64,000 nucleotides of DNA from Oopsacas minuta (GCA_024704765.1 JAKMXF010000343.1:248001-312000), one strand, 5' to 3'. Positions 63 to 62,645 are shown, numbered from the stretch's first letter. Made by a program: numbers and translations. The notes: generated by a model from the letters alone, not told the origin.

Positions 63-1340
63 ATGCATAAACGTAATACCCGCAGAACCAAGAATACACC
101 CAGCACTAAATCTCCAAAAGCACTCAACATAATCTCTTCCATCAAAAACTACATAGGAATCGATGAGAATTTTCTTCTCCAAGATCTCATATATTCTCCC
201 TCTTTCTCATGGCTGACCTGTGCTATCCTACTGCCAATCGAGCTAATACTAAATATCCTAGTGATAAATCATGTGAAGTATACAGAAATAGATTGGGAAG
301 CTTATATGCACGAAGTAGAAGGTTTTATCAATGGCACATTGGATTATGCTAAGTTAAACGGTTCGACAGGTCCTTTAGTATACCCAGCTGGATTTGTTTA
401 TATATTTTCTGTGCTTTATAGTATCACAGATTGCGGACGTATTATACCTCTAGCACAGTATATTTTCGCCGGAATATACCTCGTAAACTTAGTTGTCATA
501 TTTCGCATTTACTTGAAAAGCACTGATCTTCCCCCGTACATGTATTTGCTGCTAAGTTGTACTGCTTATCGAATTCATTCAATTTACATTCTAAGGTTAT
601 TTAATGATACGATTGCAATGCTATTTCTTTACTCAGCTGTTTATGCATTCCTATCTAACAGATGGTTGTTAGGATGTGTAGTATATAGTTTAGGTGTGTC
701 TGTTAAGATGAATGTGTTACTTTTCGCGCCTGGATTATTGGTACTATTGCTGCAGTTCAATTCACCGATTCGTACGGTTTGTTACTTGTCCGTTTGTGCT
801 GTTACTCAGCTTATATTAGGTCTCCCTTTCTTACTGACATACCCTGTGAATTATATGAGCCGTGCTTTTCAGTTTAATCGAATATTCTTATACAAATGGA
901 CGGTTAATTGGAGGTTTTTACCTGAAGAAATTTTCCATGATAGATTATTCCATATCACTTTAATAACTGTTCTTATTGTAATTCTATCTGCTTTATATTA
1001 CTTCAAATGGAGTAAACCAATATACTCCCCTCTTATTTGTTTTAAAAGAATCTCACAGAAAGGAGAATTCTCTAAAAGTGTGAATTGTCACATTTTGTTT
1101 GTTCTATTTACTTCAAACTTTTGTGGAATAGCATTTTCAAGGACTTTACATTTCCAATTTTATGTTTGGTATTTCCATACATTACATTTTCTGGTTTGGA
1201 AGAGACGCTGTCCTGTCGCGTTAGCAGTATGTCTTTTGGGATTAATAGAACTTTCTTACAAGATATTCCCTTCTACCTATTGGAGTTCTGCTATTTTACA
1301 GTTATCTCATGTTATTATATTGGTGATGCAGTTTTTCTAA
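63..1340 (+). CDS. ALG3: Dol-P-Man:Man5GlcNAc2-PP-Dol alpha-1,3-mannosyltransferase, intronless
   Basis: 425-aa multi-TM ORF with ALG3 motifs VKYTEIDWEAYM, GSTGPLVYPAGFVY, RIHSIYILRLFND, SVKMNVLLFAPG, SRTLHFQFYVWYFH. Confidence 0.96.
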   Translation: MHKRNTRRTKNTPSTKSPKALNIISSIKNYIGIDENFLLQDLIYSPSFSWLTCAILLPIELILNILVINHVKYTEIDWEAYMHEVEGFINGTLDYAKLNGSTGPLVYPAGFVYIFSVLYSITDCGRIIPLAQYIFAGIYLVNLVVIFRIYLKSTDLPPYMYLLLSCTAYRIHSIYILRLFNDTIAMLFLYSAVYAFLSNRWLLGCVVYSLGVSVKMNVLLFAPGLLVLLLQFNSPIRTVCYLSVCAVTQLILGLPFLLTYPVNYMSRAFQFNRIFLYKWTVNWRFLPEEIFHDRLFHITLITVLIVILSALYYFKWSKPIYSPLICFKRISQKGEFSKSVNCHILFVLFTSNFCGIAFSRTLHFQFYVWYFHTLHFLVWKRRCPVALAVCLLGLIELSYKIFPSTYWSSAILQLSHVIILVMQFF

Positions 1341-1690
1341 TTGTATTATTTGTGTCAATAGCTTTTGATTATAATTGTTGAGGTTTCAATAGTATACGAA
1401 TTTGCAATTCCTTCAATTACTCAAAAGTTAATGCTATTTTCATGCCATTTTCATAACAAGCTCATGTCATATGTAAACAGTACAAAAGTATATGAACTTT
1501 CTACACGATTTGCAATACTGCTTAGGACCCTCGTTGGTAAAGTTACGAGAAATATCCTATCATTTACAAAGGACAACTGCCCTGCAGCAGTGTGTCTGTT
1601 ATTCGGAAGTTCCGCTATACTTACATGTCCTTCGTTCCTATCATGCACGTATTACTTACATATAAATTCTAATACAATATAGCCTTTATT

Positions 1691-4600
1691 ATGGCAACAG
1701 AATCTACATCAGAAGCTAACGATGATAGTCTTATTATAGTCCATGTATACGGCCTACCTGATGAGAAAACTGATGGTTTCAAAATTAAAACTGAAGCAGA
1801 ACCTATAAATACTAATACCATGAAAGATACCGTGGGTAAGCCTATAGCTCCGAGTGATTTTTTGAAGCAATTTCATCCGTTTGGAGAGGAGAATAAATCA
1901 CTGAATACTCCAAAATTTAGCTCCAGGGATATTACAACAGACTCAATGGCTTCTAAACCAAGAGCTCCATATTTTCATACACCACGTCCTCACTTGTCTA
2001 TGCGACCACCGGTTGTTATACAAACACATAATAATATAAATTCTCCATTAGCTCGCCCTATTCCACCTCAGAATAATATAAGAGTGCTACATCAACCAAA
2101 CGTTTGTCAACCAAATTTTCAAACAACTCATCGCCAGCAACAACCCCCTATACATCAAGTGACAAGGAATGTGGACCAGGGACGAGCCCCATCTCGTACA
2201 CCGTTAGCCCCTCATGAGCTTATAAAAGGGAGAAAGGACCAACCCAGACCAAGTTTCCCAAAAAGTCATCAACTGATACCTCCTGTGGTTGTTCAACAAC
2301 AAAGTAACGAATCTTCGCATCCAATGGAGCACTCTTCAACTTGGAACCGTGGGCCGTTACCCCCTCATGAGTTCTTAAGATCCACAGGGCAAATCAAGCA
2401 TAATCCCCGGCCAAACTTCCAAAGATCTCATAAAACAATAGATAGCACTTCGCTAATACATACATCTAGCTATACTCCCCCAATTGATAGGGGTATGTCA
2501 CGTGTACCATTAGCTCCTCATCAGCTTATCAATAAGACAGGGTTATCTACTAGATTCACTTCTAATAATGCACACATCCAATTCCCAACACCGCCTGTCC
2601 ATCGATCAGCTGATCACGAGCACTCACGCAGTCGTTCATATACAGAAACACATCAAATTAGTAGAGAGGTTAGGCCGACAGCTAGACAACATGCACGAAC
2701 AGTTCCTTTAGCGCCACACGAAATATTGCAAGCTCCTACTTCCTCACAACAAACTCCATCTCAAATCCTTCCAAAGAATAGTATAAGACAACAAATTATT
2801 GACTACTTAAGAAGCGAAAGTATAGCGCAGACAGCTCTCAAAATTTCTAAAGACATAAACCAGCAGAAATTGGAAGTTCAGGTTATTCTTGACTCTCTAA
2901 CTCAGCAGTCTATTGTATTTATAGCAAATACTACACGACCATCCACATACTCAATTAACAGCTCTTCCCCCGTATCTCCATACACTCAACAAAAACGGCC
3001 TCTATCACTAACAGAATCTAATTTAGTATCAAACAATTCTAAGCGTATTGATACTACTGCGAAAGATTTCAATATGGACCCTGTTAGCCTATTAGCACAT
3101 TTATGTAGTAGAGACAGAATACCTCTTATCTATCAAGTAGTAGATAGCCAACAGAAGGGAAGTAAAGTAGAGTTCGTTATGGAAGTTCATGTAGGAGATA
3201 AGAAGTACACCGCTAGTGGTAGTAATAAGAAAAATGCTAAAAAGGATGTTTCTGATATTGCTCTTAAAGATATGCTAGTGCATGGTAAGTAGTAGTACAG
3301 TCAAATCCCGTAATGTCAAACACGGATATATCAAAATACCTGCTTATACCGAAGTAATTATCGCGATCCCTTGAGCGTCGATATAACAGGAGTTGACTAT
3401 ATGTATGTTACTTTGACGGTTTGGGACCATACGTATTGGTATAATGTAAGACCTCGATATATCCGAGTTCAATTTGACTGTATTTCTAATTTAGGACATA
3501 CTAATGTTGATCTGAAGATGATATCATATGTTGGACAGGTCCATCTAGCTAACTTCCATTCAGAGATAGCAGCGAGATCTCAGGAGTTCTTCCTGTATCT
3601 TATATCACATGTACCTGAAGCACAAACAGGACGAAAGGTGATTTAACAATTCTAGAAATATGTCAGTGGAATCTCGTTAATACGAACACCAACAGACCTC
3701 AATTGTTCGCTTTATCCCCAATTCGTGTTAACAGTGTTAGTATTAACGAAGTTTCACTGTATTCATTTTCGAGACTTTTTATCATGATCTTCATACTTGC
3801 CAACCTGAGTGAGAAAAGAGCGGACGGAAGGTGTAAATTTAGCGGTAGGACATCGCGGGACGTAGTATATTTGTGTTAGACTGGACTACAAAATCGGGAC
3901 AATTGAGGTTCTTGGTAAGTTCTGGCTGGAGATTACCCTCATTGCTCTCAACGGATGTCCGAAAGAGCGGGACAGTTGGCAAGTATATGATCTTGTGAAT
4001 GTGCTGTAAATATTATATAACTGTGTTTAGGTATTTGCTTGTATTTTCCTTGAGACCCCAGACAATCAATTCCAGATAGTTTCAGTTGGTTCTGGGACCC
4101 GTTGCTGTGCAGGATCTGTTATAAGCTGTAGTGGTGACGTCATTCACGATACACACGCTGAAATAATGGCTAGAAGAGCTCTAATACGTTACTTAATGCA
4201 TAATCTTAAAGGCTATTATAATCAGGAATCATCTGGAGATATGTTTGAGGAGGGAGACTATTCTTTGAGCATTAGAGATGGATTTAAATTCCATTTATAT
4301 ATATCACATGCTCCTTGTGGTGATAGTGCTATATTCGTTAGGTAGGCATTTAATAATAGAGCAGTACAGTCGAATCCTATTAAGCGGGTTCTCTTGTATA
4401 TTATCTCATAAATACCTTCTAGGAGTGATTTAGAAAATACAGAATGCCATCCTGACGGCTCCCACAATCCCACCCGTACCAACAAGAACCAAGGACTACT
4501 TCGTACCAAGATAGAGGAAGGAGAAGGTACTCTCCCTTGTGACGACATTCCACAGACCGTAGATGGGATCCTAAGAGGATCTCGTGTTAGAGTTATGTCA

Positions 4601-5182
4601 TGTTCTGATAAAGTGGGTCGATGGAATGTGGTTGGATTACAAGGTGCTTTGCTAAGCAATTTCATAGAACCTGTGTATCTTAGTAGTATAACGCTAGGTA
4701 CACTGTATCATCATGGACATTTGTCTAGGGCAGTTTGTTGTAGATTTCAACACCCTGATCTTGTGGACCACTTGCACCCACCCTTTAGAGTGGTGCACCC
4801 TCTGCTTGGTACTGTTCCGGGTAATGAGGAGATCAAGCGACACGTTGGGAAGGCTTCCACCGGAAGTTTGAATTGGACACCATTCGATGAGAACCCAGAA
4901 TTCCTTGATGGAGGTACGGGTCGACCTACATCAAAATTTATCCTGAAATTAGACCAATTGAATTCTAAATCACGATTATCAAAAGTATCATTCCTAAAAG
5001 AATTCCGTGAGCTATGTTACTTATCAGGACATGATTATTTACTAGATCTTAATTACAGAGCTTGTAAGGATGAAGCTAGGAGCTACCAGCAAACGAAACA
5101 AAGTCTATTACATTTCTGCAAAAAGGTAGAGTTTGGAGTATGGACTAGCATGCCTCGGGAGGTTGACGAGTTTACTGTGTGA
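1691..5182 (+). CDS. ADAR: dsRNA adenosine deaminase, ADAR1-like; exons about 1691-3284, 3495-3637, 4031-4341, 4423-5182
   Basis: GT-AG joins give one frame: Z-domain-like winged helix (IRQQIIDYL...TALKISKDI), one dsRBD (DPVSLLAHLC...GSNKKNAKKDVS), deaminase with FHSEIAARS, HDTHAEIMARR, SHAPCGD, LRTKIEEGEG and MSCSDK. Confidence 0.93.
3298..3480. mobile_element. MITE family A (TA-flanked, pogo/Tigger-like ends) in ADAR intron 1
   Basis: TA|CAGTCAAAT...ATTTGACTG|TA; internal CGGATATATC/GATATATCCG inverted pair; related copies elsewhere in window. Confidence 0.8.
3664..3759. mobile_element. MITE family B in ADAR intron 2
   Basis: TIRs CAGTGGAATCTCGTTAATAC / GTATTAACGAAGTTTCACTG followed by TA. 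Confidence 0.8.
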
Positions 5183-6475: not shown

Positions 6476-9145
6476 ATGGAAACCAAACCGGAGAAAAGGA
6501 TTTTCACTTATATGTCTGATCTTGGACCAGAAAGATTAACAAGATTAGCAGAGACACTTGATGTCATTCAGCCTGAAGAACACAATTGGAGAAGATTAGT
6601 GAAATATCTCAGAGAATTCCATTTCGAGTATAGAGACTATGAAATAGAGAATTTCGCGAAAGAAATCGCATGTCTGAACGGCAGCCCATCGTCCGCGCTT
6701 CTTAACGACATGATTGAACGTCGTGTCCCTCTCTCAGTTTTCAGAGAAATTTTGAAATTAATGAAACACTTACCTGCTCTGGAAATGCTGGGCGTACGAG
6801 AGAAACCTAGTATTACATTAGAACCACAGAGAATACATCAAAAAGTGGAGGGTGACCATTTAAGCATTGAATTTAAAGCATACGGTATTCCTAGACCAAA
6901 TTATCAATGGTATAAACGTAATGAGAATGAATGGCGAATGATAACTGAACGCCAGAAACGGACAGAGTTACTTTTTGAAAGATTAACTATACATGATAAT
7001 GGAGAGTATAGATGCTTAGCAATTAACGAGAAGGGGGAGGAATACACGAAAACGGTTACAATTCATGTGCAAAGCAACAGTTCTACAACTTATCTAAAGC
7101 CTAAACTGCCGTCTGAGATTTCCGTTTATGAGCATGAACCATTGAGAATTGACGTAACCCTAGATGCCCCGAATTGTGTGTGGAATTATATTTGGTATAG
7201 AAGTCCTAAACATGCGATGAATGCTCGTTCTAATACAGCTCACCAACTCCCAAACCAAATCACCCCTAGCCTGTACATACCGACTACTACAATTAATGAT
7301 GCTGGATGTTACTACTGCTGTATATTCAACTCTGTTCATCAACTCTATTCAGATGCTTGTTTGGTTACAGTTGTACAACTTAGCTATTCTCTTCCCTCTT
7401 CACCGCCTTACGTCACTCCTGCTGTCCATTTAGCCAAAAATGACTCGTCTAGTATTGGCCTAGGATACCCTGATTTGTCATATAAACGGAGACCACCTGG
7501 AGCCAGTAACAGTAACATTTCCAACCCTCCTTCTTATAGGGATGATTGGGATTCCCAGCCTGATTTAGGGTCTCGTACTTGCTCAGACTCCTCGACAAGA
7601 CCTGGGGGTAACCATCGAACCAAATCTCCGACTATATTCGATATCGATACCGACTTGAATATTCAAATTGACTGTAACGGCGATTCTATCTTGAAAGAGG
7701 CGCCATTAGATGTAACTCTACATTTAAAACATTTTCAAGCTGAGCACGATCTAGGTGCTACTTACCAATGGTATTTCATCCCCCTGGATAACCCAGGAGC
7801 AGCTCCTAGACTCAAAGAAAATTGGAAAGAGCGTGAGTGCACATTTAAAGTCTTAACAAAAGATTTCTATGGCTCATATATCTGTGTACAATTACTGAGT
7901 GATAATACTAAGAGAGTATCTTTGAGAACGAAGGTTTGTCCACCGGGAACTGATAAGTGTAGAGATAAGGTAGCATTGCTTATTGGTAATCAAAAGTATC
8001 GTGAACAAGTTTTCACGCTTCATCTCCCTGAGTCTGATACGCGTGATCTAGCAGGTAGATTACGATCACTCGGTTTTCGTGTGGTAACGCTAGTTAACCT
8101 TAACAGCAAGGACATGCGTATCGCCATTAAGCACTACGTTAAGCTGCTTAACACTGGCGTATATGCACTATTCTATTACGGAGGTCATGGCTTTGAGAAG
8201 GACGGTGAGAACTATCTTATGGGGGTAGAGTCGTCACGTGAATATAAGATAGAACATTGTATAGAAGCTAAATGGATTCGTGAACAGATGGCGTCACGTA
8301 ACGCAAGGCTTAACATGATGATATTAGATATGTGCAGAACTAAAGTGGTGAATACTTCAGCTTCATCGCCTCTACCTTTACGTATGCATCATCCTGAATT
8401 AGATAATGCTCCGCATATTATAGCATATTCATGTTCACCGTCCTGTCAGGCGTTTGAACGACCAGCTGATGAGAATTCTATATATATGACTGAGCTATTG
8501 AAATGTATAGGAGAACCGTACCGTGTTGAGAATTTGTTAGTTGAAGTTAGCACGCGTGTTTGTGAAGTTGGGAAGGAAACAGGAGTCCCGGAGTTTAGCT
8601 GGATGCATCCGTTCTTTAAAACGAACTTAACAGAAGCATTCTCCCTACATGATCCCATAGACACAGACAATCGGTATAAAGAGGACTACGAATTGATAGC
8701 TCAGAGATGGCAAGAAGTACACAAATGTCCTCCTAAGCAGGTTATACAATCAGATGATGGGATACTTGTATTACGACTACATTTTGATGCTGAACACTCT
8801 AATGTACTGTTAATTGGCATTGAGAATATGGTGGGATCTTTATCACGTACTGAGATTGTATCACTACAACTAGAAGTTTATCATGATTATCCTTCAGCCG
8901 TTCAGCTGTATAGCGTAACTTGTGAAAATCTCGACGAATTCACCTGCCAAGGTGCACTACTCCCCGAGGTCAATAATCCACTAGCTCGCTATCGAATACC
9001 AGATCTACAGCTATTCCAATGGGGGATGAAATTTGTATTTACAGTCGTCTACCAAAACGATGGATCTACAATTCAAAAACATATCAAATTTGTACCCAAT
9101 CCTTCACCTCTCTATGCTAAGCTAATACACAGACAAGACACCTAA
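6476..9145 (+). CDS. MALT1: MALT1-like paracaspase (death domain, Ig domains, caspase-like protease, C-terminal Ig-like), intronless
   Basis: 889 aa; DD (RLAETLD...WRRLV), Ig motifs (PNYQWYK, DNGEYRC, DAGCYYC), KVALLIGNQKY, catalytic dyad motifs YYGGHGFE and ILDMCR. Confidence 0.9.
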   Translation: METKPEKRIFTYMSDLGPERLTRLAETLDVIQPEEHNWRRLVKYLREFHFEYRDYEIENFAKEIACLNGSPSSALLNDMIERRVPLSVFREILKLMKHLPALEMLGVREKPSITLEPQRIHQKVEGDHLSIEFKAYGIPRPNYQWYKRNENEWRMITERQKRTELLFERLTIHDNGEYRCLAINEKGEEYTKTVTIHVQSNSSTTYLKPKLPSEISVYEHEPLRIDVTLDAPNCVWNYIWYRSPKHAMNARSNTAHQLPNQITPSLYIPTTTINDAGCYYCCIFNSVHQLYSDACLVTVVQLSYSLPSSPPYVTPAVHLAKNDSSSIGLGYPDLSYKRRPPGASNSNISNPPSYRDDWDSQPDLGSRTCSDSSTRPGGNHRTKSPTIFDIDTDLNIQIDCNGDSILKEAPLDVTLHLKHFQAEHDLGATYQWYFIPLDNPGAAPRLKENWKERECTFKVLTKDFYGSYICVQLLSDNTKRVSLRTKVCPPGTDKCRDKVALLIGNQKYREQVFTLHLPESDTRDLAGRLRSLGFRVVTLVNLNSKDMRIAIKHYVKLLNTGVYALFYYGGHGFEKDGENYLMGVESSREYKIEHCIEAKWIREQMASRNARLNMMILDMCRTKVVNTSASSPLPLRMHHPELDNAPHIIAYSCSPSCQAFERPADENSIYMTELLKCIGEPYRVENLLVEVSTRVCEVGKETGVPEFSWMHPFFKTNLTEAFSLHDPIDTDNRYKEDYELIAQRWQEVHKCPPKQVIQSDDGILVLRLHFDAEHSNVLLIGIENMVGSLSRTEIVSLQLEVYHDYPSAVQLYSVTCENLDEFTCQGALLPEVNNPLARYRIPDLQLFQWGMKFVFTVVYQNDGSTIQKHIKFVPNPSPLYAKLIHRQDT

Positions 9146-9607: not shown

Positions 9608-11013
9608 ATGTGCCTTCAGAAAAATAAAAATAGTATTCCAGATAGATGGGGGGATTACTCTAACTTCAAAGGTGTCATAAAGGAATGTAACCTACTTCCT
9701 TGTAAAACACCTCTGAAAAATGCAGTATTCCTGCAGGGATTAGAAGATATGTTGTTGACAGAAGATCAACATTTCACACCAGGAGATTGTTATAAAATGG
9801 TACATGAAATATTCAAACTAAAACTTGAGTTTGTAATTGATTTCACGAACACAAGTCGATATTATTTCAGCGAAAATTTTGAAAAACTTGGTGTGAAGCA
9901 TGTGAAAATTCAATGTGTTGGCAGGTGTATTCCACCTGAAGATGTTTACAAACAGTTCCATATGGCTATGGATACATGTCTACAGCTTGTATCAGCTGAT
10001 GGAGTTATTGCCGTGCATTGTACACACGGTCTCAACCGATCTGGGTTCTTGGTATCTAACTATTTGATGAATAAATTCGGCTATACTATGGAGCAAGCTG
10101 TGGATACTTTCAATACAGCTAGAGGTCATGAAATAGAGCGAGGTGAGTATCTTGATAAGTTGAGGAATGATATGTATCCAGCTCCTAAAGAGAATACTTT
10201 TAAATTTCAGGAACGAAAAGTTGATACTATTGTTACAGATTCAATTACAGTTCCTAAGCCACCAATTAAACAGGATGAATCCAGGTTTGTAATAAACTAA
10301 TAATACATACGTAATTACGTATACTGTGGTCATATCTCGAAAACTATAAGTTTGTTTTATATGCTCAAAATTGTAAAAATGTAGGTCAGAGTATCACCTT
10401 CCCGTTAGCTATTTAACACTATTTGTATGCATGGTTCTGTTTCTTGTGGCCCGATTACCCCTATACGCCAATTCGACCGTATTTCTACGAATAAATTTTA
10501 TCTATTTTATCCCACAGAACTAAAAAACGAGAAACAACAAAATCACATCCTCCATACGATTATTCATATGAACATCAATACCCTCCAAACCGTGATCACC
10601 ATTATCCACGACATCGAGGTCACAATAGAGAATATGCATACCGTGATAGTTACCATGGTAGATACCATGGTAGATACCATGGTAACCACGACCAATACTA
10701 TTCGCATGAACAAAAGTCATACAAGCGTGCTTCATCATCGTCACGTTATACAAAACGCCCCCACAATCGGGATTTGCATCCAGCTCCCTTTCCAAAGTAT
10801 GAACAACCCCGTACTTTCCATGACCCCTCTGTAGACCGTCGTCACTATCATCCTCCCCCTTATTTACCGCCAGAGGCCTGGGGTCCCCCCGCAAACCAGC
10901 CCAGAGGTGCATATAGGATGTACGGTAGACCTCGTGGACCATCTTCTCACAAATATCACAGTAAGTCAAGTGATGTACGCACATACTCTGGTGTTCCTTA
11001 TATTAAGCATTAA
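9608..11013 (+). CDS. DUSP11: RNA 5'-triphosphatase DUSP11/PIR1-like; exons about 9608-10284 and 10518-11013
   Basis: IPDRWGDY, PCKTPL, IDFTNTSRYY, P-loop HCTHGLNRSG; no guanylyltransferase domain follows, so not RNGTT; exon 2 encodes an R/H/Y/P-rich tail. Confidence 0.85.
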
Positions 11014-11274: not shown

Positions 11275-14262
11275 ATGTCTAGCATATGTCTAAACTCAGC
11301 AGGAGGAGTTATCGCTCTCCTGGAGGAGAAGAACCCTACTATTAAACATTATGCGTTACAAAAACTAGATGATATTGTAGATGAATTCTGGACAGAGATT
11401 TCTGAAGTTGTTGCTAAAATCGAGGTGCTTTATGAAGATGAACATTTCGCTGACAGACAGCTCGCGGCACTCATCAGCTCAAAAGTATACTACCATCTAG
11501 GTGCGTATGAGGATGCGATGAATTTCGCACTTGGAGCAGGTGATAAATTCGACGTGAATGTCAAATCAGAATATGTAGATACAATCCTGTCTCAGTGTCT
11601 TGACGAATACGTGAAACTCCGTATCAAAATAGTAGACGAAAATGAAGCAATACAAATTGATAGCAGGCTAGAATCAGTAGTTAACAGAATGTTCTTGAAA
11701 TGTTTTGAGGACCAGAAGTACAAATTAGCTGCTGGCATGGCTCTTGAAGCGAGGCGAGTTGATTTCTTCGAAGATTCCATAAAACAATCGGAGAATACTT
11801 CTTCTATGCTTATATACTGTATGAAGATTGTACTCTCATTGATCGACCATAGAGAATTCCGTAGCAACGTGCTTGGTATATTGGTACGCATCTTCCTGGA
11901 ACAGCATACACTAGACTACGTTCTTATATGCCAATGCTACGTATTCCTAGGCGATCATCAATCTGTGTCTAATATTTTAGAGAATCTAATGCAAGGAAAT
12001 GATGAGGATAATTTAATCGCTTACCAAATTGGATTTGATTTATACGAAAATTCGTCTCAGAGTTTCTTAACACACGTAATAGAGTCTATTACAGCAAATC
12101 TACCGAATCCTGACTTAAAGACTCCAGTTAAGAAACCGGTTGAAGCAGCAACAGGAGATTCCGGTATGGACCCAATGGAGTTGGAATTGGAAGAAGCCAA
12201 AAATGTAGCACTCCCAGGTGATGAATTGGAAGAAGCCGCACGTACACCACTCCCTGATAAGGAACCCTCAGTAGAGCTAAACACTAAACTGTCCCATTTC
12301 TATGCCATACTATACGGGAACGCTACCATTGCATTACACCAAGAATTCCTTATAAGGAATAATCATACTGACGTGCAAGTGCTTAAAAACATCAAAGATT
12401 TCGTTCGATACTCCATAACACACAATGCAACTATCATTTCCAATGCATTAATGTGTTTCGGCACTACTTCTGATGTGTTTCTACGTAATAATCTTGATTG
12501 GCTTGGTAAGGCTCAAAACTGGGCTAAATTCACTGCTACAGGTAGTCTAGGGCTGGTACACTGGGGTCACGAGAGAGAAGCACTTAAAGTGATGTCTACC
12601 TACCTCCCTAAGGACAGTAGTGGTAGTGGGGGTGGAGTATACGCAGAAGGAGGCAGTTTATACGCACTGGGATTAATACACGCGAATCATGGGCACAATA
12701 TAATCGAATACCTCCAGGATCAGCTGACTGCAGCTACTAGCGAAGTTATACAGCATGGTGGATGTCTAGGACTAGGCCTAGCTGCAATGGGTACAGCACG
12801 TGCTGACGTATTCGATCTGTTACTACAACATTTACATAAATCAGATGCAGTCATTGGAGAAGCTGCAGGCATAGCTATGGGACTTGTAATGCTCGGTAGT
12901 GCTAACGAAAATGCTATTAAAGAAATGCTCGAGTATGCGAAAGAAACGCCACACGAGAAAATTCTACGAGGTCTAGCTATAGGCATTTCTCTAGTCATGT
13001 TCGCTACGCTTGATGATGGCGATGTTCTCATAGAAACTCTATTAGCTGATAAAGATCCGTTACTAAGACGATCTGGTATTTATACTATAGCCATGGCTTA
13101 TTGCGGCACTGGTAATAATAAAGCTATACGGAAACTGCTGCATGTAGCTGTATCTGATGTAGATGATGACGTCAGGCGGGCTGCTGTTATGTGTCTAGGC
13201 TTTCTTCTATTCCAAACACCTGAACAGTGTCCTAATGCTGTGTCCCTCCTGTCAGAGAGTTATAACCCACACGTTAGATGTGGTGCAAGCTTGGCATTAG
13301 GAATAGCTTGTGCTGGTACTGGGAATAAAGAAGCATTGTCTCTTCTCGAAACTCTTACCGATGACCAAAGTAATTTTGTTAGACAAAATGCACATATAGC
13401 ATCTGCTATGATACTCTTACAGCAAAGTGAAATTAGTAATTCTAGACTCGCAAAATTCCGCGAGAATTACATCAAGGTAGTGTCTGATAAACATGAAGAT
13501 AATGTGACTAAATTCGGTGCAATAATAGCTCAGGGTATTCTCAATGCTGGTGGGAGGAATGTGACAATAAATCTCAAGTCTAGGAACGGGCATACAAATG
13601 CCCGTGCTGCAGTAGGACTATTAGTATTCACTCATTTCTGGTTTTGGTTCCCACTATCTCATTTCATTTCACTCGCCTTTGTTCCCACTTCTCTAATATC
13701 GATTAATTCAGACTTAAAAATGCCTAAAATACAATACAAATCCAATGCAAATCCAAATATATTCGCTTATCCCCCTCCCGTTAAGAAAGATCAGGAAAAA
13801 GTAAAGTCTAAGGTGGCTACTGCTATTCTCTCTATAAGTGCTAAGGGCAAAAAGGCAAAAAAGGCAGATGACGTCACTGAGAAGGAGGGTGAGGACATTG
13901 GAGCTACTGAGGGGTCCTCTGATCCCCCCAAAGATGAGGTTAAGTCTAAACCAGAGGGAGAGGGGGCAGATGAAATGGAGACTGAATCTCCCACGAAAGT
14001 TGAGCCTACTTTTGAGATGCTTTCCAATCCAGCTAGAGTACTTCCAAAACAGTTACAGTATATTAGCTTAGAAGAAAATTGTAGATATATGCCTACTAAA
14101 AGTATTGTGGATGGTGGGATTATTCTCATGCGGAATTTAGCACCTGGAGATGAGGAACAGCTGATCGAGAATTTGAAAGTCATCCTTCCTGGAGAGGAGG
14201 ACGAGGGAGAGGAGCCTGAACCCCCTGAGGCCTTCGAATGGAAGGATGAGTTCTTGGATTAA
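11275..14262 (+). CDS. PSMD1: 26S proteasome subunit Rpn2, intronless
   Basis: 995 aa; SAGGVIALLEE, NLDWLGKAQNWAKF, PC repeats (GLGLAAMGT, VSDVDDDVRRAAV), C-terminal EPEPPEAFEW. Confidence 0.98.
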   Translation: MSSICLNSAGGVIALLEEKNPTIKHYALQKLDDIVDEFWTEISEVVAKIEVLYEDEHFADRQLAALISSKVYYHLGAYEDAMNFALGAGDKFDVNVKSEYVDTILSQCLDEYVKLRIKIVDENEAIQIDSRLESVVNRMFLKCFEDQKYKLAAGMALEARRVDFFEDSIKQSENTSSMLIYCMKIVLSLIDHREFRSNVLGILVRIFLEQHTLDYVLICQCYVFLGDHQSVSNILENLMQGNDEDNLIAYQIGFDLYENSSQSFLTHVIESITANLPNPDLKTPVKKPVEAATGDSGMDPMELELEEAKNVALPGDELEEAARTPLPDKEPSVELNTKLSHFYAILYGNATIALHQEFLIRNNHTDVQVLKNIKDFVRYSITHNATIISNALMCFGTTSDVFLRNNLDWLGKAQNWAKFTATGSLGLVHWGHEREALKVMSTYLPKDSSGSGGGVYAEGGSLYALGLIHANHGHNIIEYLQDQLTAATSEVIQHGGCLGLGLAAMGTARADVFDLLLQHLHKSDAVIGEAAGIAMGLVMLGSANENAIKEMLEYAKETPHEKILRGLAIGISLVMFATLDDGDVLIETLLADKDPLLRRSGIYTIAMAYCGTGNNKAIRKLLHVAVSDVDDDVRRAAVMCLGFLLFQTPEQCPNAVSLLSESYNPHVRCGASLALGIACAGTGNKEALSLLETLTDDQSNFVRQNAHIASAMILLQQSEISNSRLAKFRENYIKVVSDKHEDNVTKFGAIIAQGILNAGGRNVTINLKSRNGHTNARAAVGLLVFTHFWFWFPLSHFISLAFVPTSLISINSDLKMPKIQYKSNANPNIFAYPPPVKKDQEKVKSKVATAILSISAKGKKAKKADDVTEKEGEDIGATEGSSDPPKDEVKSKPEGEGADEMETESPTKVEPTFEMLSNPARVLPKQLQYISLEENCRYMPTKSIVDGGIILMRNLAPGDEEQLIENLKVILPGEEDEGEEPEPPEAFEWKDEFLD

Positions 14263-14478
14263 TAGAAGAGTGACTGTGTGTAGTGAGTTAGTAATCTTAT
14301 GTGTTGTAGTATCAAGCGATTATCTAGGTGTTGTGCATAGACATTCTAACATTCATGCTTTGATCATTTGGTAGATTACTATGGGTAGATTACCTCTGTT
14401 GTAGGCCAAAAAACATACAACATATATTAAGCTATACATTATAGATTAGTTTAGCTGTTATGATTAATTGAATTAGTA

Positions 14479-16804: not shown

Positions 16805-16805
16805 G

Positions 16806-16858
<53 letters not shown>

Positions 16859-16886
16859 ATTGTTGTTGTTGTTGTTATTGTTGTTG
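16805..16886 (+). repeat. (GTT)n microsatellite directly after the OXSR1 stop codon
   Basis: About 27 GTT units with two ATT interruptions. Confidence 0.97.
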
Positions 16887-32628: not shown

Positions 32629-41307
<8,679 letters not shown>

Positions 41308-49144: not shown

Positions 49145-49408
49145 ATGGCTAAGTCAAAGAATCATACTAATCACAATCAGAATAGAAAAGCTCACCGTAA
49201 CGGTATAAAGCGACCCAAAACTTATCGCTATCCCTCCCTCCGGGGGGTTGATCCCAAGCTTCTGAGGAATTTGAAGTTTGCTAGGAAGTACAACAAGAAA
49301 GGAAAGAAGACCGATTCGAAGCCTGTTGACACTCCAAAAGCTCCAGAAACAACTGCGCCGCAGCCTACTACAACTACTACTACTACCGCAAAGCCTACCG
49401 TTGCGTAG
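49145..49408 (+). CDS. RPL29: 60S ribosomal protein eL29
   Basis: [24 protein letters not shown]...[12 protein letters not shown], plus P/T/K-rich tail. Confidence 0.97.
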
Positions 49409-50945: not shown

Positions 50946-52947
<2,002 letters not shown>

Positions 52948-56531: not shown

Positions 56532-56688
56532 CAGTGTAGTCAGGTTTTGTGTTCGCCTATTTGCAATATTAACATAATACCAATTTTTCAGAGTCCAATT
56601 TGTGAATTGTAAATAATAACTATAAAGCAAGTTCGCGTATTAGCAAGGATTCGTGAAAATTCCACTTGCTAATAGGCGGACTCCACTG
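56532..56688. mobile_element. MITE family D, decayed
   Basis: GTTCGCCTATTTGCAA ... CTTGCTAATAGGCGGACTCCACTG; same family as 58086-58229 and the fragment near 22850-22873. Confidence 0.65.
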
Positions 56689-57266
56689 TTGTCTTCCGAC
56701 AATTTGCAGTAAGCAATTATTACAAATAATTAAGACACACGTAAAATGATTGCATTTCTAATCTCCATATAATTTCTCTTCCCTGTTTGTTACATAGATA
56801 TATTCATCAATTTTACACTGCGCAATCCCCTGTTGACTCTTATATTTTCTACAGATAGCACACAACCAAATAGTAATCGCTATTAATAAATCATCCAATT
56901 TCATATTAACCCGCTTACAATTGCAATAATAGCAAAACTGCCATTCCATCCTTCACAGAAACTTCAAATTAATTAAAACTTCATAGGTAAAATTCCTATA
57001 AATTTAATGACAAAGATTTACCGAACGCATTGAAACCTATTAACAAAATTCGAACTATGATTCTATCCCTATAATACTATTATAGCGTGCTAATTAAGCT
57101 AACTACTAAATGGCGATGCCATAAATCTCACTTCAACTTTTGAATATAAATCTTGACGCGACATTCTCTTTATAATTGTTTACCGTGTTTTAAAATGCTA
57201 ACAGTTACCAGTTACGGTCAGCCTATACTCATCCCCGCGTATACAAGACCATTATCCAAACTACGA

Positions 57267-60200
57267 ATGGCATCAACTCGAGTATCAGCTGTTTGGGGCT
57301 ATGACTATGAGCACAACGGGAAAAGTATCTCATTCGCAGCTGGGGAGATGTTTGATTTAGTTGAGAAATCAAATGCAGATTGGTGGCTTGTATCACGCGT
57401 ACCTGGTGAAAGTTTCTTCGTACCAGCAAACTATTTGAAAGAAGAACAGAAGCAGAGTTCATCTCAAAAATCGCCAAACGTGATCCCCAAAGAAGGGAAG
57501 CCACTCAGTCCAAAGCCAAGTCTGAAACCTAAACCAATAAAGTCTGTAAACAGTGGCGGTTTTGACGTAGAGAAGCAAAAACCCCCACCTCCCCCTGTCT
57601 CCAAAAAGCGCACTCAGGTGAACAATCGTTTCGAAGAGGTCCCGAACCTTTCTCTACTCCCTGAAATGAGACCCAGGAAATGTCCAACTGTTTCATATCC
57701 CAAAGCACACGAAGGACTCAAGAATGAATTAAACTCGAAGCTAAACAGACTATTGCCTGCTTTACCTGTACAGAACGTTAGACACAGTACTGAGATATTC
57801 ACTAAGAAGGACTTTGATCGTGATAGCTATTACGATACATTAACTCCTCTGAATAATGATAAGGAAGATGAAGTATATGAGGCTGTAAGTTACATAACTT
57901 AATACGGAGGCCAATGCATAATCCTCTGTAGTATCCTTACATGAAAGGTATCTATGGTTTCCTGAAGTACAGGATTGCTCGCTTATTCAATGTCATACGC
58001 GTGAACACGTTTTTGGGAGATTTTATGGTTTCGCCAAATAAAGCTGAAAATGTGAAAATCGTATTTCTTGTTCGATCAGTGTACACAGTGGTGTTCGCCT
58101 AATAGCAAGTTTAATTAAGCAGTAACTTAGAGTCTACATTGCATTGGAAATAATTCCTCAAATAGTAAGTTCTCGTTTTAGCAAGGTAAATTCGTGCAAA
58201 ATACAACTTGCTAATGGCAAACTCCACTGTATAATCGAATTTAGAGATAAATATTATCTAATTGTTATATTTCGCAGGTACAGGATCCTATAGTAAATAC
58301 AATAAGACATCCCCAACCAGCTCCAAGAACAGAGCACAGTCAGAGTGATTCAGATATTCTAAGAAAGCATGAACAAGTGCCTTCTCCTCCGAAGCGTAAT
58401 TCTAGACTCTCAGAAATTCCAAAAATCCCAGAAATTCCAAAAATCCCTGAAATATCAAAAATCCCAGAATTACCAAACCTGTCCAATTCCCAAATGCATA
58501 CAACAGAGAATACGTTACGTAGCATAGATAACAAACCGAAGAGACGTGGAACTATGCACTCAGTTCAATCTAGTCCGGATTTACCTGATGGAACTAATAA
58601 TATAAGACAACAGAGAGTATTACCCGCACTTGTCTCCAATCGTAGCGCCTCACTTAGTGATGATAAGCATTTGTAAGTTAAAATCATTTATATTTGTTTA
58701 AATCATGGACTATTGTCTTTGCAATTTATTTTTGTCATTTTAAACTGTCTGAAAGTAGGATTCGGTGCCAGCTTGATGCATAATAGGTAACCTTGGATTC
58801 CTAGTTACACTCAAGTAGGTACGCCGAACCTCGAACAACTTAACAATTCAAGGGACTTATACCCATGTTTTGTATTAGCCAGGTGTATGGCTCAACCTCT
58901 GTCCGCTGGATTTGGCGCCTATGCGCTCTAGGAATCCTGAATTTCACGAATGGCCTCAGTTTCTATATGTATGAAAATTTCTAAATTATCTTAATTATGA
59001 AACAGATACTTTTCTCCTGGATAACTTTTATTATTTAATATTAGGACATACAGGTTAACACTACCATACTTGGTTAAGTACATCCTTCTATATGATTTAT
59101 CTCCTACGTTAGCGTACTGTATTCTTATGAAAGTGTCAACACCACAGGTCATATACGTATATCATATTAATTACTACATGTATCTAAACCCATATGAAAT
59201 ATCCATAAATATGATTAAGCAACTGTCAAGAATTAAACTAACATTCCATAAATACAGTATAAATATTGGAGAAATAGATTTGCAAACAAAGAACGAAATT
59301 ATATTCGATTAATCCAATAAACAAAATGTTTAGAAGATATTTCTCTCCCAAATTTAGGATCATTACAGAGAACAAGAAGCCTATTGAACTCACAAATTCC
59401 CTTCCAGGAGCTATCGACACGAATGCCAGCAACAGTTTCAGCCCCAACGAATCTCCGTACCCATCCCAACAACAACAACAGGGACATGGCAAATTTACAT
59501 TTGGCTCAATGCACTTCGAAAAACGTGGAAATGTAAATAGATTCCGAAAAGATGGTGGATTGTTTAAAGGAGGAAAATGGGAATCACAATATATGGTGCT
59601 GGAGAATTTCACAATCTTTTTCTATAAAGATTCTAAAGTAGCAAGATCGGATAGTCCTCAATCCCAGCATGTACTGTACTTACAGCATTGTACAGTGCAT
59701 CTTGTTCCCGAAATGAAAGATGCTAGAAAACATCAGTTCAAATTCGTGGATCAGGAAAATAATGAAGAAACTTTATGCCAGGTGAGTAGTACTGTTAATT
59801 TTGTATAATAGAACGAGTATTATTCGTGCATTTGTCTAGTCTCAAGCGGTTCCACTCACTGGTAAATGCATTATAATTTTATTGCTATTTTCTGACTATT
59901 CTCATATCAAATTTCGCATTATTTGATATAGTTAAACCCAGTGAAAAACATGAAAAATCCAGTATTTGGCGATAATACTAGTGTAACGGGGACCAGAGAC
60001 GCCGAAAATGTTACCCCGTTTATGGAATTTCATTTGTATGGGCCTAAGAATTCGCTCTATGTATTTTCACTCCATTTCCAGAAGTTTCATGTTTCCACAG
60101 GTCCCATATGTAAAGGTTTCGCTGTAGTATTACAATTTTGCTACAATATATTGAACTGAACTATTTTACTTTATTTCTATCTAATAGGCTGAAAATGCCC

Positions 60201-61003
60201 AATCAATGAACGAATGGTTCTCTATTATCCAAACTACAATTTCTCAATGTGCAGAATCCCCGCGTAAAATAAGCATACCTGACGCACATCCACCGAACAT
60301 AACCAATGAACCTAAAATTGACGAAAAGAAGAAAGACAAACTCCGAAGATTCCTCAGACAGCGTCCCAACATTGAAACCCTTCAGAAGAATGGAATTTTA
60401 CATTACAGTGTATTTGGATCACCTCTAGAATCCGTGGTTGAAAAAGAACATAGTACAGTGCCAGATTTCGCTTTGAAATGTATAAAGGAAGTTGAATCAC
60501 GTGGTCTTGACGTAATGGGGATATACCGGCTAGCTGGCAATACATCTCAAGTACAAAAACTTAGATATATCGTAGATCAAGAACAGTTATATTTCCTGGA
60601 TGATTTAGATAAATGGGACGATATAAATATTATCACAGGGGCACTTAAACTGTTCCTCCGTGAAATGCCTGAGCCATTGATTCCCTTCAACCAATATGAT
60701 AGTTTTGTAGAGTCTGCTTACATCTTAGATACAAGAGAACGGGTTAACTTCCTCCGTAAGCTATTAGATAACTTTCCTAAACCCAATTACGACCTATTTC
60801 AACTACTATGCAATCACCTAGAGCGAGTGGTACAGTACTCAGACGTTAACAAAATGAAATCGTCCAATTTAGCTATAGTATTCGGTCCCACCTTAGTACG
60901 TCCGGAAATAGACACAGCGTTAACAATCGGACATTTCACCGCAATAAATAACTCCCTCGAATTCTTACTATCACATTATCAAGAGCTATTTACACGTTAT
61001 TAA
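57267..61003 (+). CDS. SH3-PH-RhoGAP protein of the ARHGAP12/27/9 family, multi-exon
   Basis: SH3 (VSAVWGYDY...SNADWWLV...FVPANYL), PH (KRGNVNRFRKDGGLFKGGKWESQYMVL), RhoGAP (FGSPL, GIYRLAGN, ITGALKLFLREMPEPL, NKMKSSNLAIVFGPTL). Confidence 0.88.
58086..58229. mobile_element. MITE family D in ARHGAP intron
   Basis: CAGTGGTGTTCGCCTAATAGCAAG / CTTGCTAATGGCAAACTCCACTG|TA. Confidence 0.78.
58409..58476 (+). repeat. 18-bp coding tandem repeat (EIPKIP)x3 in ARHGAP exon
   Basis: cagaaattccaaaaatcc units encode SEIPKIPEIPKIPEISKIPELP. Confidence 0.85.
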
Positions 61004-61415: not shown

Positions 61416-61448
61416 TATAATATGAACTTAAGAAAATCATTTACAGCC

Positions 61449-62645
61449 ATGTTACAAGAAGATACAATATGTGAGAATTTATCAGAAATCGGGCCTTCAC
61501 AATCTGGCCTGGGACTGATCTACACGAGACTAGAGCTGTCAAATATGTCACTCTCAGACATAGAAGCTGTATCCAATTTTAAACAGCTACAACATATAGA
61601 TATATCTCATAACTTGATTGAGGATGTAACGCCATTAGCGAACATTCACAATCTTCTATCATTAGACGTTTCACACAACAAAATAAAGGTTCATATTAAC
61701 CTGTATTATCTCGTAGACTGGGGCATATATCGCCTCATAGGACATGAGGAGTTGATGAACAGTGAATGTCGGTTATAAGAACACCCTTGACAGTAGCCTG
61801 CATGTTCTTCTAACCGGTATCCACTGTAATATACTTGTTTCTCATCCCCACCTGTTGCAATTTTTAGTATCAATTGAAATATACGCAGGCGTGAAATATG
61901 ATTATTCATACGGTAAATCATGTAGATAAAGATTTGAAAATGTCAAAATTCTACATATCTACTCAATTACCCCATACATTATTGTAGGAATGGCCAGATC
62001 TCAACACAGTAGGAAATATAAAGTCACTAGACTTATCTCACAATCAGCTGACTACAATTGAACATGTAACTCACCTGAGACAGATCCGATCACTCAGATT
62101 AGATCACAATCAAATACAGGTGTTACCCTCTAGTTTACAGAATCTTAAACAACTACTAACTCTAACTGCAGCTAAGAATTATATTAATAAAATTAATGGG
62201 TAAGATAATGTTTATCGATTTTCCATATATGTTCATATTTTCACACCTTTTCAGTGACAACTTTCTGATAGTTTTAATAATTCTCATTCGATATTATAGG
62301 CTTCAAAATCTATCAATTAAACATCTCGACCTCCATGGCAACCAGATCAAGCGTGTGGAATCCCTCGAGGGTACACGCTACTTACAACACCTAGATCTAT
62401 CTGAGAACTCCATCCAGTCTCTGAGAGGTTTACAGGGACATTCCTGCCTAGAAGAACTGTTGCTAAGCAACAATTCAGTATTAGATATAACAGAAATAAA
62501 ATACATTATGGATCTCCGAGCTCTTAGAGAACTTAACTTAAAAGATAATCCAATACAAACACTAGCTGGATATAGAGCTAGTGTGGTGTTTAAGCTGAAT
62601 CAGATTAGTTTATTGGATGAAGAAGTTGTTACACCAAAGGAAAAG
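61449..62645 (+). CDS. LRGUK: 5' LRR exons of an LRGUK-like (LRRC23/LRGUK family) gene; exons about 61449-61688, 61988-62200, 62300-62645; no stop found, probably continues beyond the window
   Basis: ENLSEIGPSQSGLGLIYTRLEL, SDS22-type LRRs, LRRcap LNLKDNPIQ...YRASVVFKL...TPKEK, ending at a GT donor. Confidence 0.7.

What the first reader, a model, noticed from the sequence alone, without database searches (positions are those of the whole stretch)
63..62645. Twenty consecutive same-strand genes with short gaps: candidate operon-like polycistronic block
Seen: all 20 non-nested protein genes are on the + strand, head-to-tail. Stop-to-ATG gaps include PSMD1-OXSR1 216 bp, TRAP1-LARS1 254, DUSP11-PSMD1 261, LARS1-TPGS1 307, AADAC-RPL29 326, ALG3-ADAR 350 and PTPN9-PEF1 361, and these must hold a 3' UTR plus the next 5' end. 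If orientation were random the chance is about 2^-19. The genes are functionally unrelated. Known: nematode and tunicate operons look like this and are resolved by spliced-leader trans-splicing, and SL trans-splicing has been reported in hexactinellid sponges. Inference: this is one or several polycistronic transcription units.
Basis: partly seen in the sequence, partly recalled or inferred. Interest (0 to 1): 0.85.

Follow-up and report, generated by a model that had tools for sequence, protein, structure and literature searches.

The report
One-way gene array in glass sponge
Twenty unrelated genes of the glass sponge Oopsacas minuta really do lie head-to-tail on one strand, and four related sponges keep part of that layout. 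Several of the genes carry their own promoters, and no RNA joining two genes was seen, so it is an operon-like layout but not a shown operon.

Summary
Observation confirmed. The window is Oopsacas minuta contig JAKMXF010000343.1, bases 248001-312000. It holds 20 unrelated + strand genes, and all seven quoted gaps (216-361 nt) are exact. The only minus-strand genes lie inside introns, or between halves of PTPN9 and LRGUK that the public annotation splits. The run continues beyond both window ends (at least 82 kb). Four other glass-sponge assemblies keep ADAR>paracaspase>DUSP11>PSMD1>OXSR1>TRAP1>LARS1 in the same order and orientation.

Interpretation unproven.
- **Not one unit.** The paracaspase gene has a TATA box and an upstream block conserved in all five species. 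TATA-like boxes peak 26-50 nt before about a third of the start codons.
- **Acceptor signal is not operon-specific.** TAG/CAG lies within 15 nt of the ATG in 14 of 18 genes (p about 1e-4), and in all 10 TATA-less, short-gap genes. The three antisense nested genes show it too.
- **No bridging RNA.** RNA-like contigs over 14000-19999 show only four ordinary introns, no joint between genes, and low depth in the OXSR1-TRAP1 gap.
- **Spacers are not held.** They vary up to about 3.5-fold between species.

Small spliced-leader operons within the tight sub-runs remain possible (about 0.3).

The scan has noted the same pattern many times on other pieces of this genome.

The parts
63..1340 (+). ALG3, single exon. 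TATAAA about 39 nt before the ATG.
   Evidence: Pfam ALG3 E=6e-130; public gene call; upstream sequence
1691..5182 (+). ADAR (dsrm + A_deamin)
   Evidence: Pfam; public gene call of 935 aa
6345..6436 (+). Paracaspase promoter. It has a block GAACTTGTATGGC (6345-6357) and a TATA box TATAAA (6431-6436). Both are found upstream of the orthologous ATG in relatives.
   Evidence: TAGTATAAAT lies 45-78 nt before the ATG in all 5 species. The upstream block keeps its position in the window and 3 relatives.
6476..9145 (+). Paracaspase (Ig + caspase domains), single exon
   Evidence: Pfam Peptidase_C14, Ig_3
9608..11013 (+). DUSP11-like phosphatase. A conserved acceptor-like AG lies 10-13 nt before the ATG (G at 9594).
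   Evidence: Pfam DSPc; last exon conserved in the + frame only; AG conserved in 4 species
11275..14262 (+). PSMD1/RPN2, single exon
   Evidence: Pfam RPN2_N/RPN2_C; orthologues at 78-85% identity in four other sponge assemblies
14263..14478 (+). Shortest gap (216 nt). It has no AATAAA/ATTAAA/TATAAA. A conserved 12-mer TTAGYTTAGCYG lies at 14446-14457. A related sponge carries about 300 extra nt at 14391-14409.
   Evidence: RNA-like depth is 941 at 14310 and 162 at 14356; X5 record 25 shows the extra sequence.
14479..16804 (+). OXSR1, 4 exons; introns 14674-14780, 15370-15759 and 16047-16401
   Evidence: Pfam Pkinase, OSR1_C; GT..AG joints in run X4
17304..19346 (+). TRAP1 (HSP90 family), single exon
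   Evidence: Pfam HSP90; an RNA-like contig begins at 17273, 31 nt before the ATG
19601..27388 (+). LARS1, many exons
   Evidence: Pfam tRNA-synt_1, RBD_LARS1, ULD_3; public gene call of 1156 aa; first intron joint
20927..21322 (-). Conserved 131-aa antisense gene nested in a LARS1 intron. TTTTAG lies 1 nt before its ATG.
   Evidence: Public gene call; 45-62% identity over the full length in 4 relatives; upstream sequence
23661..23958 (+). Metazoan SRP RNA gene nested in a LARS1 intron
   Evidence: Rfam RF00017, 210.9 bits; same place and strand in L006 and L008
27696..28352 (+). TPGS1-like, single exon
   Evidence: Pfam RIIa, TPGS1_C; public gene call
29101..31839 (+). F-BAR/TOCA-family gene (FCH, HR1, SH3)
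   Evidence: Pfam; public gene call of 529 aa
32629..41307 (+). PTPN9-like gene (CRAL_TRIO then PTP domain). The public annotation splits it into 32629-37232 and 39046-41307.
   Evidence: Pfam CRAL_TRIO, Y_phosphatase; gene calls. That it is one gene is inferred from the known PTPN9 domain architecture.
37550..38757 (-). NHL-repeat gene in two adjoining ORFs. It has its own TATAAA about 45 nt before the ATG and lies between the two halves of PTPN9.
   Evidence: Pfam NHL; gene call of 195 aa; upstream sequence
41669..42825 (+). PEF1 (penta-EF-hand)
   Evidence: Pfam EF-hand; translation
43271..44446 (+). Protein kinase, single exon
   Evidence: Pfam Pkinase E=5e-58
45166..45708 (+). CTR copper transporter
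   Evidence: Pfam Ctr; the public gene call starts at 45196
46549..47130 (+). CHTOP/FOP-like gene
   Evidence: Pfam FoP_duplication
47553..48818 (+). AADAC-like esterase
   Evidence: Pfam Abhydrolase_3
49145..49408 (+). RPL29
   Evidence: Pfam Ribosomal_L29e; translation
50961..52947 (+). ARF-family GTPase
   Evidence: Pfam Arf; ATG located; gene call end
57195..61003 (+). SH3-PH-RhoGAP gene
   Evidence: Pfam SH3, PH, RhoGAP; gene call of 774 aa
61422..64000 (+). LRGUK-like gene. The LRR part is 61422-62717 and the guanylate-kinase part starts at 63901; the gene runs off the window.
   Evidence: LRR translation; gene calls for LRR and Guanylate_kin
62947..63780 (-). RNase PH (exosome subunit), antisense, between the LRR and GuK parts. 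Only 120 nt separate its ATG from the next + exon.
   Evidence: Pfam RNase_PH; exact gene call

Best explanation
This is a real, evolutionarily conserved one-way gene array. It is made of separately processed genes and is not one operon.

Shown:
- 20 unrelated + strand genes with 216-4247 nt between stop and next ATG.
- The same order and orientation of seven of them in four other glass sponges.
- At least one conserved internal TATA promoter (paracaspase).
- A positional peak of TATA-like boxes before about a third of the genes. These are the genes with the longer upstream gaps.
- A T/G-rich flank after each stop.
- TAG/CAG a few bases before the ATG of the TATA-less, tightly spaced housekeeping genes.

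Inferred:
- Most genes start their own transcription from very compact promoters.
- The TAG/CAG sites are spliced-leader acceptors, or possibly initiators, used by single genes as well.
- With spacers of only 200-500 nt, RNA polymerase II reading past a poly(A) site runs into the neighbour. That is harmless only when the genes are in tandem. Selection therefore keeps genes co-oriented, and trans-splicing could salvage read-through RNA.

Whether any downstream gene depends on its neighbour's promoter is not shown.
For: - **Gene map and gaps:**
- **Conserved order and orientation in L005, L006/L007, L008 and L009:**
- **Paracaspase promoter:** TAGTATAAAT is conserved 45-78 nt before the ATG in 5 species, and an upstream block is conserved.
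- **TATAWA position:** 6 hits at -26..-50 against 1.3 expected (p=0.002), and none at -1..-25.
- **Gap length by class:** TATA genes have longer upstream gaps than TATA-less genes (post-hoc Mann-Whitney p=0.002).
- **Compact autonomous units inside the block:** RNase PH with 120 nt on its promoter side, a conserved antisense ORF131, and a Pol III SRP RNA in LARS1 introns.
- **Own 3' signals:** the first 150 nt after stops are T/G-rich, with (T-A)/(T+A)=0.20+-0.02.
- **RNA-like run X4:** only ordinary intron joints, a TRAP1 contig starting 31 nt before the ATG, and depth 24-46 in the OXSR1-TRAP1 gap against about 1100-1900 in the flanking exons.
- **Spacers not held:** orthologous spacers vary up to about 3.5-fold (for example DUSP11-PSMD1 256-808 nt and PSMD1-OXSR1 216-763 nt). 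They also carry repeat insertions.
- **Literature:** leaders were seen on only about 4% of long cDNA reads in Aphrocallistes vastus (PMC10282587).
Against: - A co-oriented run of 20 genes in the window, with more + genes beyond both ends, has no established cause in eukaryotes other than polycistronic transcription (kinetoplastids, dinoflagellates; established knowledge).
- No transcription start site was mapped in any gap.
- The ten tightest genes have no recognisable promoter motif, and all have TAG/CAG within 15 nt of the ATG.
- RNA-like depth in the gaps is not zero: 162 at 14356 and 45 at 16896-17187, at or above intron level.
- The TATA/gap-length split was found post hoc in 18-20 genes.
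- Contig depth is a poor measure of RNA level, as the tool itself warns.
Confidence: 0.5

Rival explanations
1. The block contains several true spliced-leader operons. A TATA-bearing gene would head each unit, and the tightly following TATA-less genes would be transcribed on the same precursor. They would then be separated by 3' cleavage and trans-splicing at the TAG/CAG before each ATG. Candidate units are paracaspase>DUSP11>PSMD1>OXSR1>TRAP1>LARS1>TPGS1, PTPN9>PEF1>kinase, and FOP>AADAC>RPL29.
For: - Co-orientation is far beyond chance and is conserved.
- All 10 TATA-less short-gap genes have TAG/CAG within 15 nt of the ATG (p about 3e-5), and so do 20 of 24 orthologous sites.
- The DUSP11 acceptor-like AG is conserved in 4 species.
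- The gap-length dichotomy fits this model.
- RNA-like depth in the gaps is low but not zero.
- Spliced leaders are documented in hexactinellids (PMC7986045, PMC10282587).
Against: - No joint, contig or leader linking genes appears in the output shown.
- Antisense nested genes, which cannot be downstream cistrons, have the same TAG/CAG.
- The near-ATG sites have no pyrimidine or C-rich tract: pyrimidine (Y) fraction 0.51 against a background of 0.52. The four RNA-confirmed acceptors have 0.60, with C 0.31.
- Spacer length is not conserved.
- The three shortest gaps have no canonical poly(A) hexamer.
- A TATA-like motif lies about 45-65 nt before the LARS1 ATG in 4 of 5 species.
- Housekeeping genes are commonly TATA-less and compact anyway (established knowledge).
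Confidence: 0.3
2. The whole run of 20 or more genes is one kinetoplastid-like polycistronic unit without gene-specific promoters.
For: The run of 20 unrelated genes extends beyond both window ends without a strand switch, for at least 82 kb. The scan has noted many similar runs in this genome (unverified notes).
Against: - A TATA promoter inside the run is conserved in five species.
- TATA-like boxes show a positional peak before a third of the genes.
- Apparent RNA depth differs about 7-fold between PSMD1 and OXSR1, and the gap depth drops about 25-50-fold (with that tool's caveat on depth).
- Only about 4% of long reads carried leaders in a related sponge (PMC10282587).
Confidence: 0.03
3. 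Co-orientation has nothing to do with transcription through the spacers. It would reflect replication direction, or a historical arrangement frozen by a very low rearrangement rate.
For: Nearly half of all genes are syntenic between two glass sponges, so rearrangement is slow (PMC10282587). Order is also kept across the long ADAR>paracaspase gap.
Against: - Slow rearrangement preserves an arrangement but does not create co-orientation of 20 or more genes.
- No consistent GC or AT skew marks a replication direction. Introns and the centres of the gaps are near zero.
Confidence: 0.1

Closest known systems
Nematode (C. elegans type) spliced-leader operons
   Same: Co-oriented, functionally unrelated and mostly housekeeping genes. 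Stop-to-ATG distances are a few hundred nt. The lineage has spliced-leader trans-splicing. AG acceptor-like sites lie just before start codons. Internal promoters are tolerated ('hybrid operons').
   Different: The run has 20 or more genes rather than 2-8. Spacers range from 216 to 4247 nt and change up to about 3.5-fold between species, rather than being a constrained spacer of about 100 nt from poly(A) site to acceptor. No second, operon-specific leader is known. No precursor RNA was shown. The same acceptor-like sites occur on antisense nested genes.
Tunicate operons (Ciona, Oikopleura)
   Same: A very compact animal genome. The acceptor abuts the ATG. Housekeeping genes are favoured for trans-splicing (PMC6883708 for Oikopleura).
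   Different: Ciona operons have almost no intercistronic spacer, and their units are short. Here every gene has a T/G-rich 3' flank and a spacer of at least 216 nt, and a third of the genes carry TATA-like boxes.
Kinetoplastid polycistronic units and dinoflagellate unidirectional gene arrays
   Same: Tens of unrelated genes on one strand, in organisms that use spliced leaders. No strand switch occurs over at least 82 kb.
   Different: Here the genes have introns, nested antisense genes and a nested Pol III gene. Some have conserved gene-specific TATA promoters. A leader was found on only a small share of reads in the one glass sponge examined (PMC10282587).

Membership tests
Spliced-leader-resolved eukaryotic operon (nematode/tunicate type) | Two or more co-oriented genes with short intercistronic distance | tested here: met
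   20 + strand genes. 10 of the 19 gaps are under 450 nt and the shortest is 216.
Spliced-leader-resolved eukaryotic operon (nematode/tunicate type) | One promoter upstream of the first gene drives all cistrons | tested here: not met
   This applies to the block as a whole. There is a conserved paracaspase TATA promoter, and TATAWA is enriched at -26..-50 before 6 of 18 genes. For the tight TATA-less sub-runs the feature remains untested.
Spliced-leader-resolved eukaryotic operon (nematode/tunicate type) | Polycistronic precursor RNA spanning neighbouring genes | tested here: inconclusive
   Contigs of an RNA-like run show no joint between genes. Depth in the gaps is low but not zero. Contigs cannot show single molecules.
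Spliced-leader-resolved eukaryotic operon (nematode/tunicate type) | Downstream cistrons receive a spliced leader at an acceptor before the ATG | tested here: inconclusive
   TAG/CAG lies within 15 nt of the ATG in 14 of 18 genes (p=1.5e-4). No leader was seen in the loose ends shown. The sites lack a pyrimidine tract and also occur on antisense nested genes.
Spliced-leader-resolved eukaryotic operon (nematode/tunicate type) | Constrained spacing between the 3'-end signal and the next acceptor | tested here: not met
   Orthologous spacers vary up to about 3.5-fold among five species. There is no AATAAA/ATTAAA/TATAAA in the 216, 261 and 326 nt gaps.
Kinetoplastid-type polycistronic transcription unit | Tens of unrelated co-oriented genes between strand-switch regions | tested here: met
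   20 genes in the window, and the run continues on both sides. No switch region lies in the DNA held.
Kinetoplastid-type polycistronic transcription unit | No gene-specific Pol II promoters | tested here: not met
   A TATA promoter is conserved inside the run, and TATA-like boxes show a positional peak.
Kinetoplastid-type polycistronic transcription unit | Every mRNA carries the spliced leader | not testable with these tools
   Only contigs were available. The literature gives leaders on about 4% of long cDNA reads in Aphrocallistes vastus (PMC10282587), which is likely a lower bound.

The most novel reading that the evidence does not exclude
Glass-sponge genomes are built of long one-way gene arrays. 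In them, tightly spaced TATA-less housekeeping genes are transcribed together with their upstream neighbour and released by spliced-leader trans-splicing. These would be the first operons in Porifera, in arrays of a length so far known only from kinetoplastids and dinoflagellates.
Probability: 0.3. Interest if true: 0.85.

Novelty: new variant of a known kind. Interest (0 to 1): 0.55.

Why it matters
Operons and polycistronic RNAs have not been reported in sponges. The library's review text says so explicitly for hexactinellids (PMC7986045), and neither glass-sponge genome paper mentions gene co-orientation (PMC10280926, PMC10282587).

A conserved one-way array of 20 or more genes in an early-branching animal bears on two questions. 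The first is how spliced-leader trans-splicing and operons arise repeatedly. The second is what limits promoter and terminator size in very compact animal genomes.

There is also a practical consequence. The public annotation fuses three neighbouring gene pairs in this window and splits two genes that host antisense genes. Gene counts and orthology calls for this genome are affected.

Tried and rejected
1. **Public fused gene models as evidence of bridging RNA** (DUSP11+PSMD1, OXSR1+TRAP1, AADAC+RPL29). Rejected. The models come from BRAKER1/Augustus with unstranded intron hints. X4 shows no such joint. Stop codons do not generally sit in splice donors: only OXSR1's TGA lies in GTGAGT.
2. **Codon-usage scoring of all six frames to find hidden minus-strand genes.** It discriminates weakly, because antisense shadows also score positive. 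The matter was settled by Pfam and cross-species tblastn.
3. **Alignment of orthologous gaps.** They are mostly unalignable. The 9-mer footprint was noisy in AT-rich DNA. Only matches that kept their position were retained: the paracaspase promoter, a LARS1 TATA-like motif and the OXSR1 12-mer.
4. **Poly(A) hexamer search.** No consistent AATAAA position was found, only T/G-rich flanks.
5. **Strand skew as a mark of transcription through the gaps.** Introns themselves show no skew, so the test has no power.
6. **Pyrimidine-tract test of the near-ATG TAG/CAG.** They do not differ from background, but only four confirmed acceptors were available for comparison.
7. **Exact-protein look-ups** for PSMD1, TRAP1, CTR and AADAC failed, because the public models differ.
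8. **The spliced-leader sequence.** It could not be obtained as text, so leaders could not be searched for.
9. **Whether PTPN9 is one gene** could not be settled with the tools.

Full report
**What the window is.** An exact-protein look-up places the window on Oopsacas minuta contig JAKMXF010000343.1 (assembly GCA_024704765.1), bases 248001-312000. The DNA is AT-rich, 30-42% G+C.

**Observation: the gene map.** Pfam on the long ORFs and exon-sized ORFs, together with the public gene calls, gives 20 + strand genes. In order they are ALG3, ADAR, a paracaspase, DUSP11, PSMD1, OXSR1, TRAP1, LARS1, TPGS1, an F-BAR/TOCA gene, a PTPN9-like gene, PEF1, a kinase, a CTR copper transporter, CHTOP/FOP, AADAC, RPL29, an ARF GTPase, an SH3-PH-RhoGAP gene and LRGUK.
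- The 19 stop-to-ATG gaps run from 216 to 4247 nt, with a median of 445.
- Three OXSR1 introns and the first LARS1 intron are confirmed by GT..AG joints. These appear only in run X4, which therefore behaves as RNA. Runs X1 and X3 are contiguous DNA.

**Observation: the minus-strand genes.** Three are real.
- A 131-aa ORF in a LARS1 intron is conserved over its full length in four relatives.
- An NHL-repeat gene lies at 37550-38757.
- RNase PH lies at 62947-63780.

The last two are nested only if CRAL_TRIO+PTP and LRR+GuK are each one gene, as in the known PTPN9 and LRGUK architectures. The public annotation splits both, and I could not settle this. Other long minus ORFs are shadows of + exons. 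An SRP RNA gene also sits in a LARS1 intron.

**Extent and conservation.** The + run continues outside the window.
- Two more + genes lie upstream.
- Further + genes lie downstream, to about window coordinate 72500, with one minus GH18 gene among them.
- The run therefore covers at least 82 kb without a strand switch.

The PSMD1 protein found orthologues at 78-85% identity on long contigs of four other assemblies. All four loci keep ADAR>paracaspase>DUSP11>PSMD1>OXSR1>TRAP1>LARS1 in the same order and orientation. The antisense ORF in LARS1 is kept in all four. The SRP RNA is kept in the two loci that reach that far.

Spacer lengths are not kept:

| Gap | Lengths across the species (nt) |
|---|---|
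| DUSP11>PSMD1 | 261, 808, 256, 538 |
| PSMD1>OXSR1 | 216, 623, 358, 352, 763 |
| OXSR1>TRAP1 | 499, 973, 484, 613, 715 |
| TRAP1>LARS1 | 254, 278, 198, 222, 453 |

The spacers are mostly unalignable and hold repeats:
- a (GTT)27 microsatellite directly after the OXSR1 stop;
- an interspersed repeat in the TRAP1>LARS1 gap;
- about 300 extra nt in the PSMD1>OXSR1 gap of a sponge about 4% diverged (X5).

**RNA evidence.** Only the one read-laying run returned contigs rather than reads. In the RNA-like run X4:
- The only splice-like joints are the four internal introns. No joint connects two genes.
- Depth is about 1100-1900 in OXSR1 and TRAP1 exons. It is 16 in a unique intron bin. It is 24-46 in the OXSR1>TRAP1 gap.
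- In the PSMD1>OXSR1 gap, depth falls from 941 (48 nt after the stop) to 162 (94 nt after).
- One TRAP1 contig begins at 17273, 31 nt before the ATG and right at a TTAG, with three unmatched letters. This fits either a start site or a splice junction.

The gaps are therefore transcribed at a low level, at or above intron level. That is expected both for a precursor and for ordinary read-through. The tool warns that contig depth cannot rank expression and that a contig across two genes is not a transcript.

**Promoter signals.** TATAA is the most enriched 5-mer in the 80 nt before start codons (16 against 4.3 expected). Against a non-coding background, TATAWA shows a positional peak at -26..-50: 6 genes against 1.3 expected (p=0.002), with none at -1..-25 and background level elsewhere.

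The paracaspase gene carries TAGTATAAAT 45-78 nt before its ATG in all five species. Further upstream it has a second conserved block, GAACTTGTATGGC. That is a conserved gene-specific promoter in the middle of the run, so the block is not one obligate transcription unit.

Genes with a TATA-like box are ALG3, ADAR, paracaspase, F-BAR, PTPN9, CTR, FOP, RhoGAP and LRGUK. For the eight tested (ALG3, the first gene, was left out), upstream gaps are longer than those of the TATA-less genes (post-hoc Mann-Whitney p=0.002).

Compact autonomous promoters clearly exist here. RNase PH has only 120 nt between its ATG and the next + exon. Shortness of a gap therefore does not by itself imply a shared promoter.

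**Acceptor-like signals.** TAG or CAG lies within 15 nt of the ATG in 14 of 18 genes. Expectation is 0.33, and control ATGs in the gaps give 0.35-0.36 (p=1.5e-4).
- All ten TATA-less, short-gap genes have it (p about 3e-5), and so do 20 of 24 orthologous sites in the relatives.
- The DUSP11 site is conserved in position in four species.
- This fits the spliced-leader trans-splicing reported for hexactinellids (PMC7986045; a leader of about 37 nt in A. vastus, PMC10282587).

Two cautions apply.
- The three antisense genes, which cannot be downstream cistrons of the + run, have the same feature at 7, 1 and 12 nt.
- The sites have no pyrimidine or C-rich tract, unlike the four RNA-confirmed acceptors (small sample).

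The signal may therefore mark trans-splicing of single genes, or an initiator-like element. It does not mark operon membership.

**3' ends.** The first 150 nt after stop codons are markedly T/G-rich, so each gene seems to carry its own 3' processing region. The three shortest gaps lack canonical AATAAA-type hexamers.

**Reading.** The arrangement is real and conserved. The library holds no paper reporting it.
- PMC7986045 states that operons have not been reported in hexactinellids.
- The O. minuta genome paper mentions neither operons, trans-splicing nor orientation.
- The A. vastus paper reports leaders on about 4% of long reads, many nested genes and wide microsynteny, but no operon analysis.

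I favour (0.5) a co-oriented array of separately initiated and separately processed genes. On this reading, tandem orientation is kept because read-through across 200-500 nt spacers is harmless only in that orientation. True small operons within the tight TATA-less sub-runs remain a serious rival (0.3). A single giant unit is very unlikely (0.03).

**Relation to earlier scan notes.** The scan has flagged the same pattern on many other pieces of this genome. Follow-ups there reached similar conclusions. I treated them as leads. I re-tested two of their claims here: the conserved arrangement in relatives, and TAG/CAG before start codons. I could not re-test their report of a leader seen in RNA.

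Noticed in passing
window 23661-23958 (+); L006 22564-22861; L008 22395-22692: A full-length metazoan SRP RNA gene sits in a LARS1 intron on the host's strand. It is conserved at the same place in two other glass sponges.
   Followed up: partly
window 20927-21322 (-): A 131-aa antisense gene with no Pfam family is nested in a LARS1 intron. It is conserved at 45-62% identity in four relatives. Its function is unknown.
   Followed up: partly
window 9608-14262, 14479-19346, 47553-49408; 32629-41307; 61422-64849: The public annotation fuses DUSP11+PSMD1 (1377 aa), OXSR1+TRAP1 (1164 aa) and AADAC+RPL29 (514 aa). It splits PTPN9-like and LRGUK-like genes around their antisense guests.
   Followed up: partly
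window 37550-38757 (-): The NHL-repeat gene is in two ORFs (37550-38134 and 38170-38757) whose frames overlap by a few bases. This could be a frameshift, a tiny intron or a decaying gene. Only the 195-aa part is annotated.
   Followed up: no
window 16801-16887: The OXSR1 stop codon TGA lies inside a consensus donor-like GTGAGT and is followed at once by a (GTT)27 microsatellite.
   Followed up: partly
window 15561-15613 and 19464-19516; also about 16160-16270 and 17145-17190: Copies of short interspersed repeats lie in OXSR1 introns and in the OXSR1>TRAP1 and TRAP1>LARS1 gaps. Contigs from other copies join these places in DNA and RNA runs alike.
   Followed up: partly
window 14446-14457: The 12-mer TTAGYTTAGCYG lies about 5-33 nt before the OXSR1 ATG and is conserved in five species. 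It is followed in most by an upstream ATG. It may be a start-site or acceptor element, or a small upstream ORF.
   Followed up: no
window 14391-14409: A sponge about 4% diverged (run X5) has about 300 extra bases here, inside the shortest gap.
   Followed up: no
window 52948-57194: A 4.2-kb stretch has no gene call, no ORF over 64 aa and no Rfam match. It is the only large empty space in the run.
   Followed up: no
L002 about 7200-7900 (about 2.1-2.8 kb before the window start): A stretch is open in five reading frames on both strands and has no public gene call. It may be low-complexity sequence or an unannotated exon of the upstream host gene.
   Followed up: no
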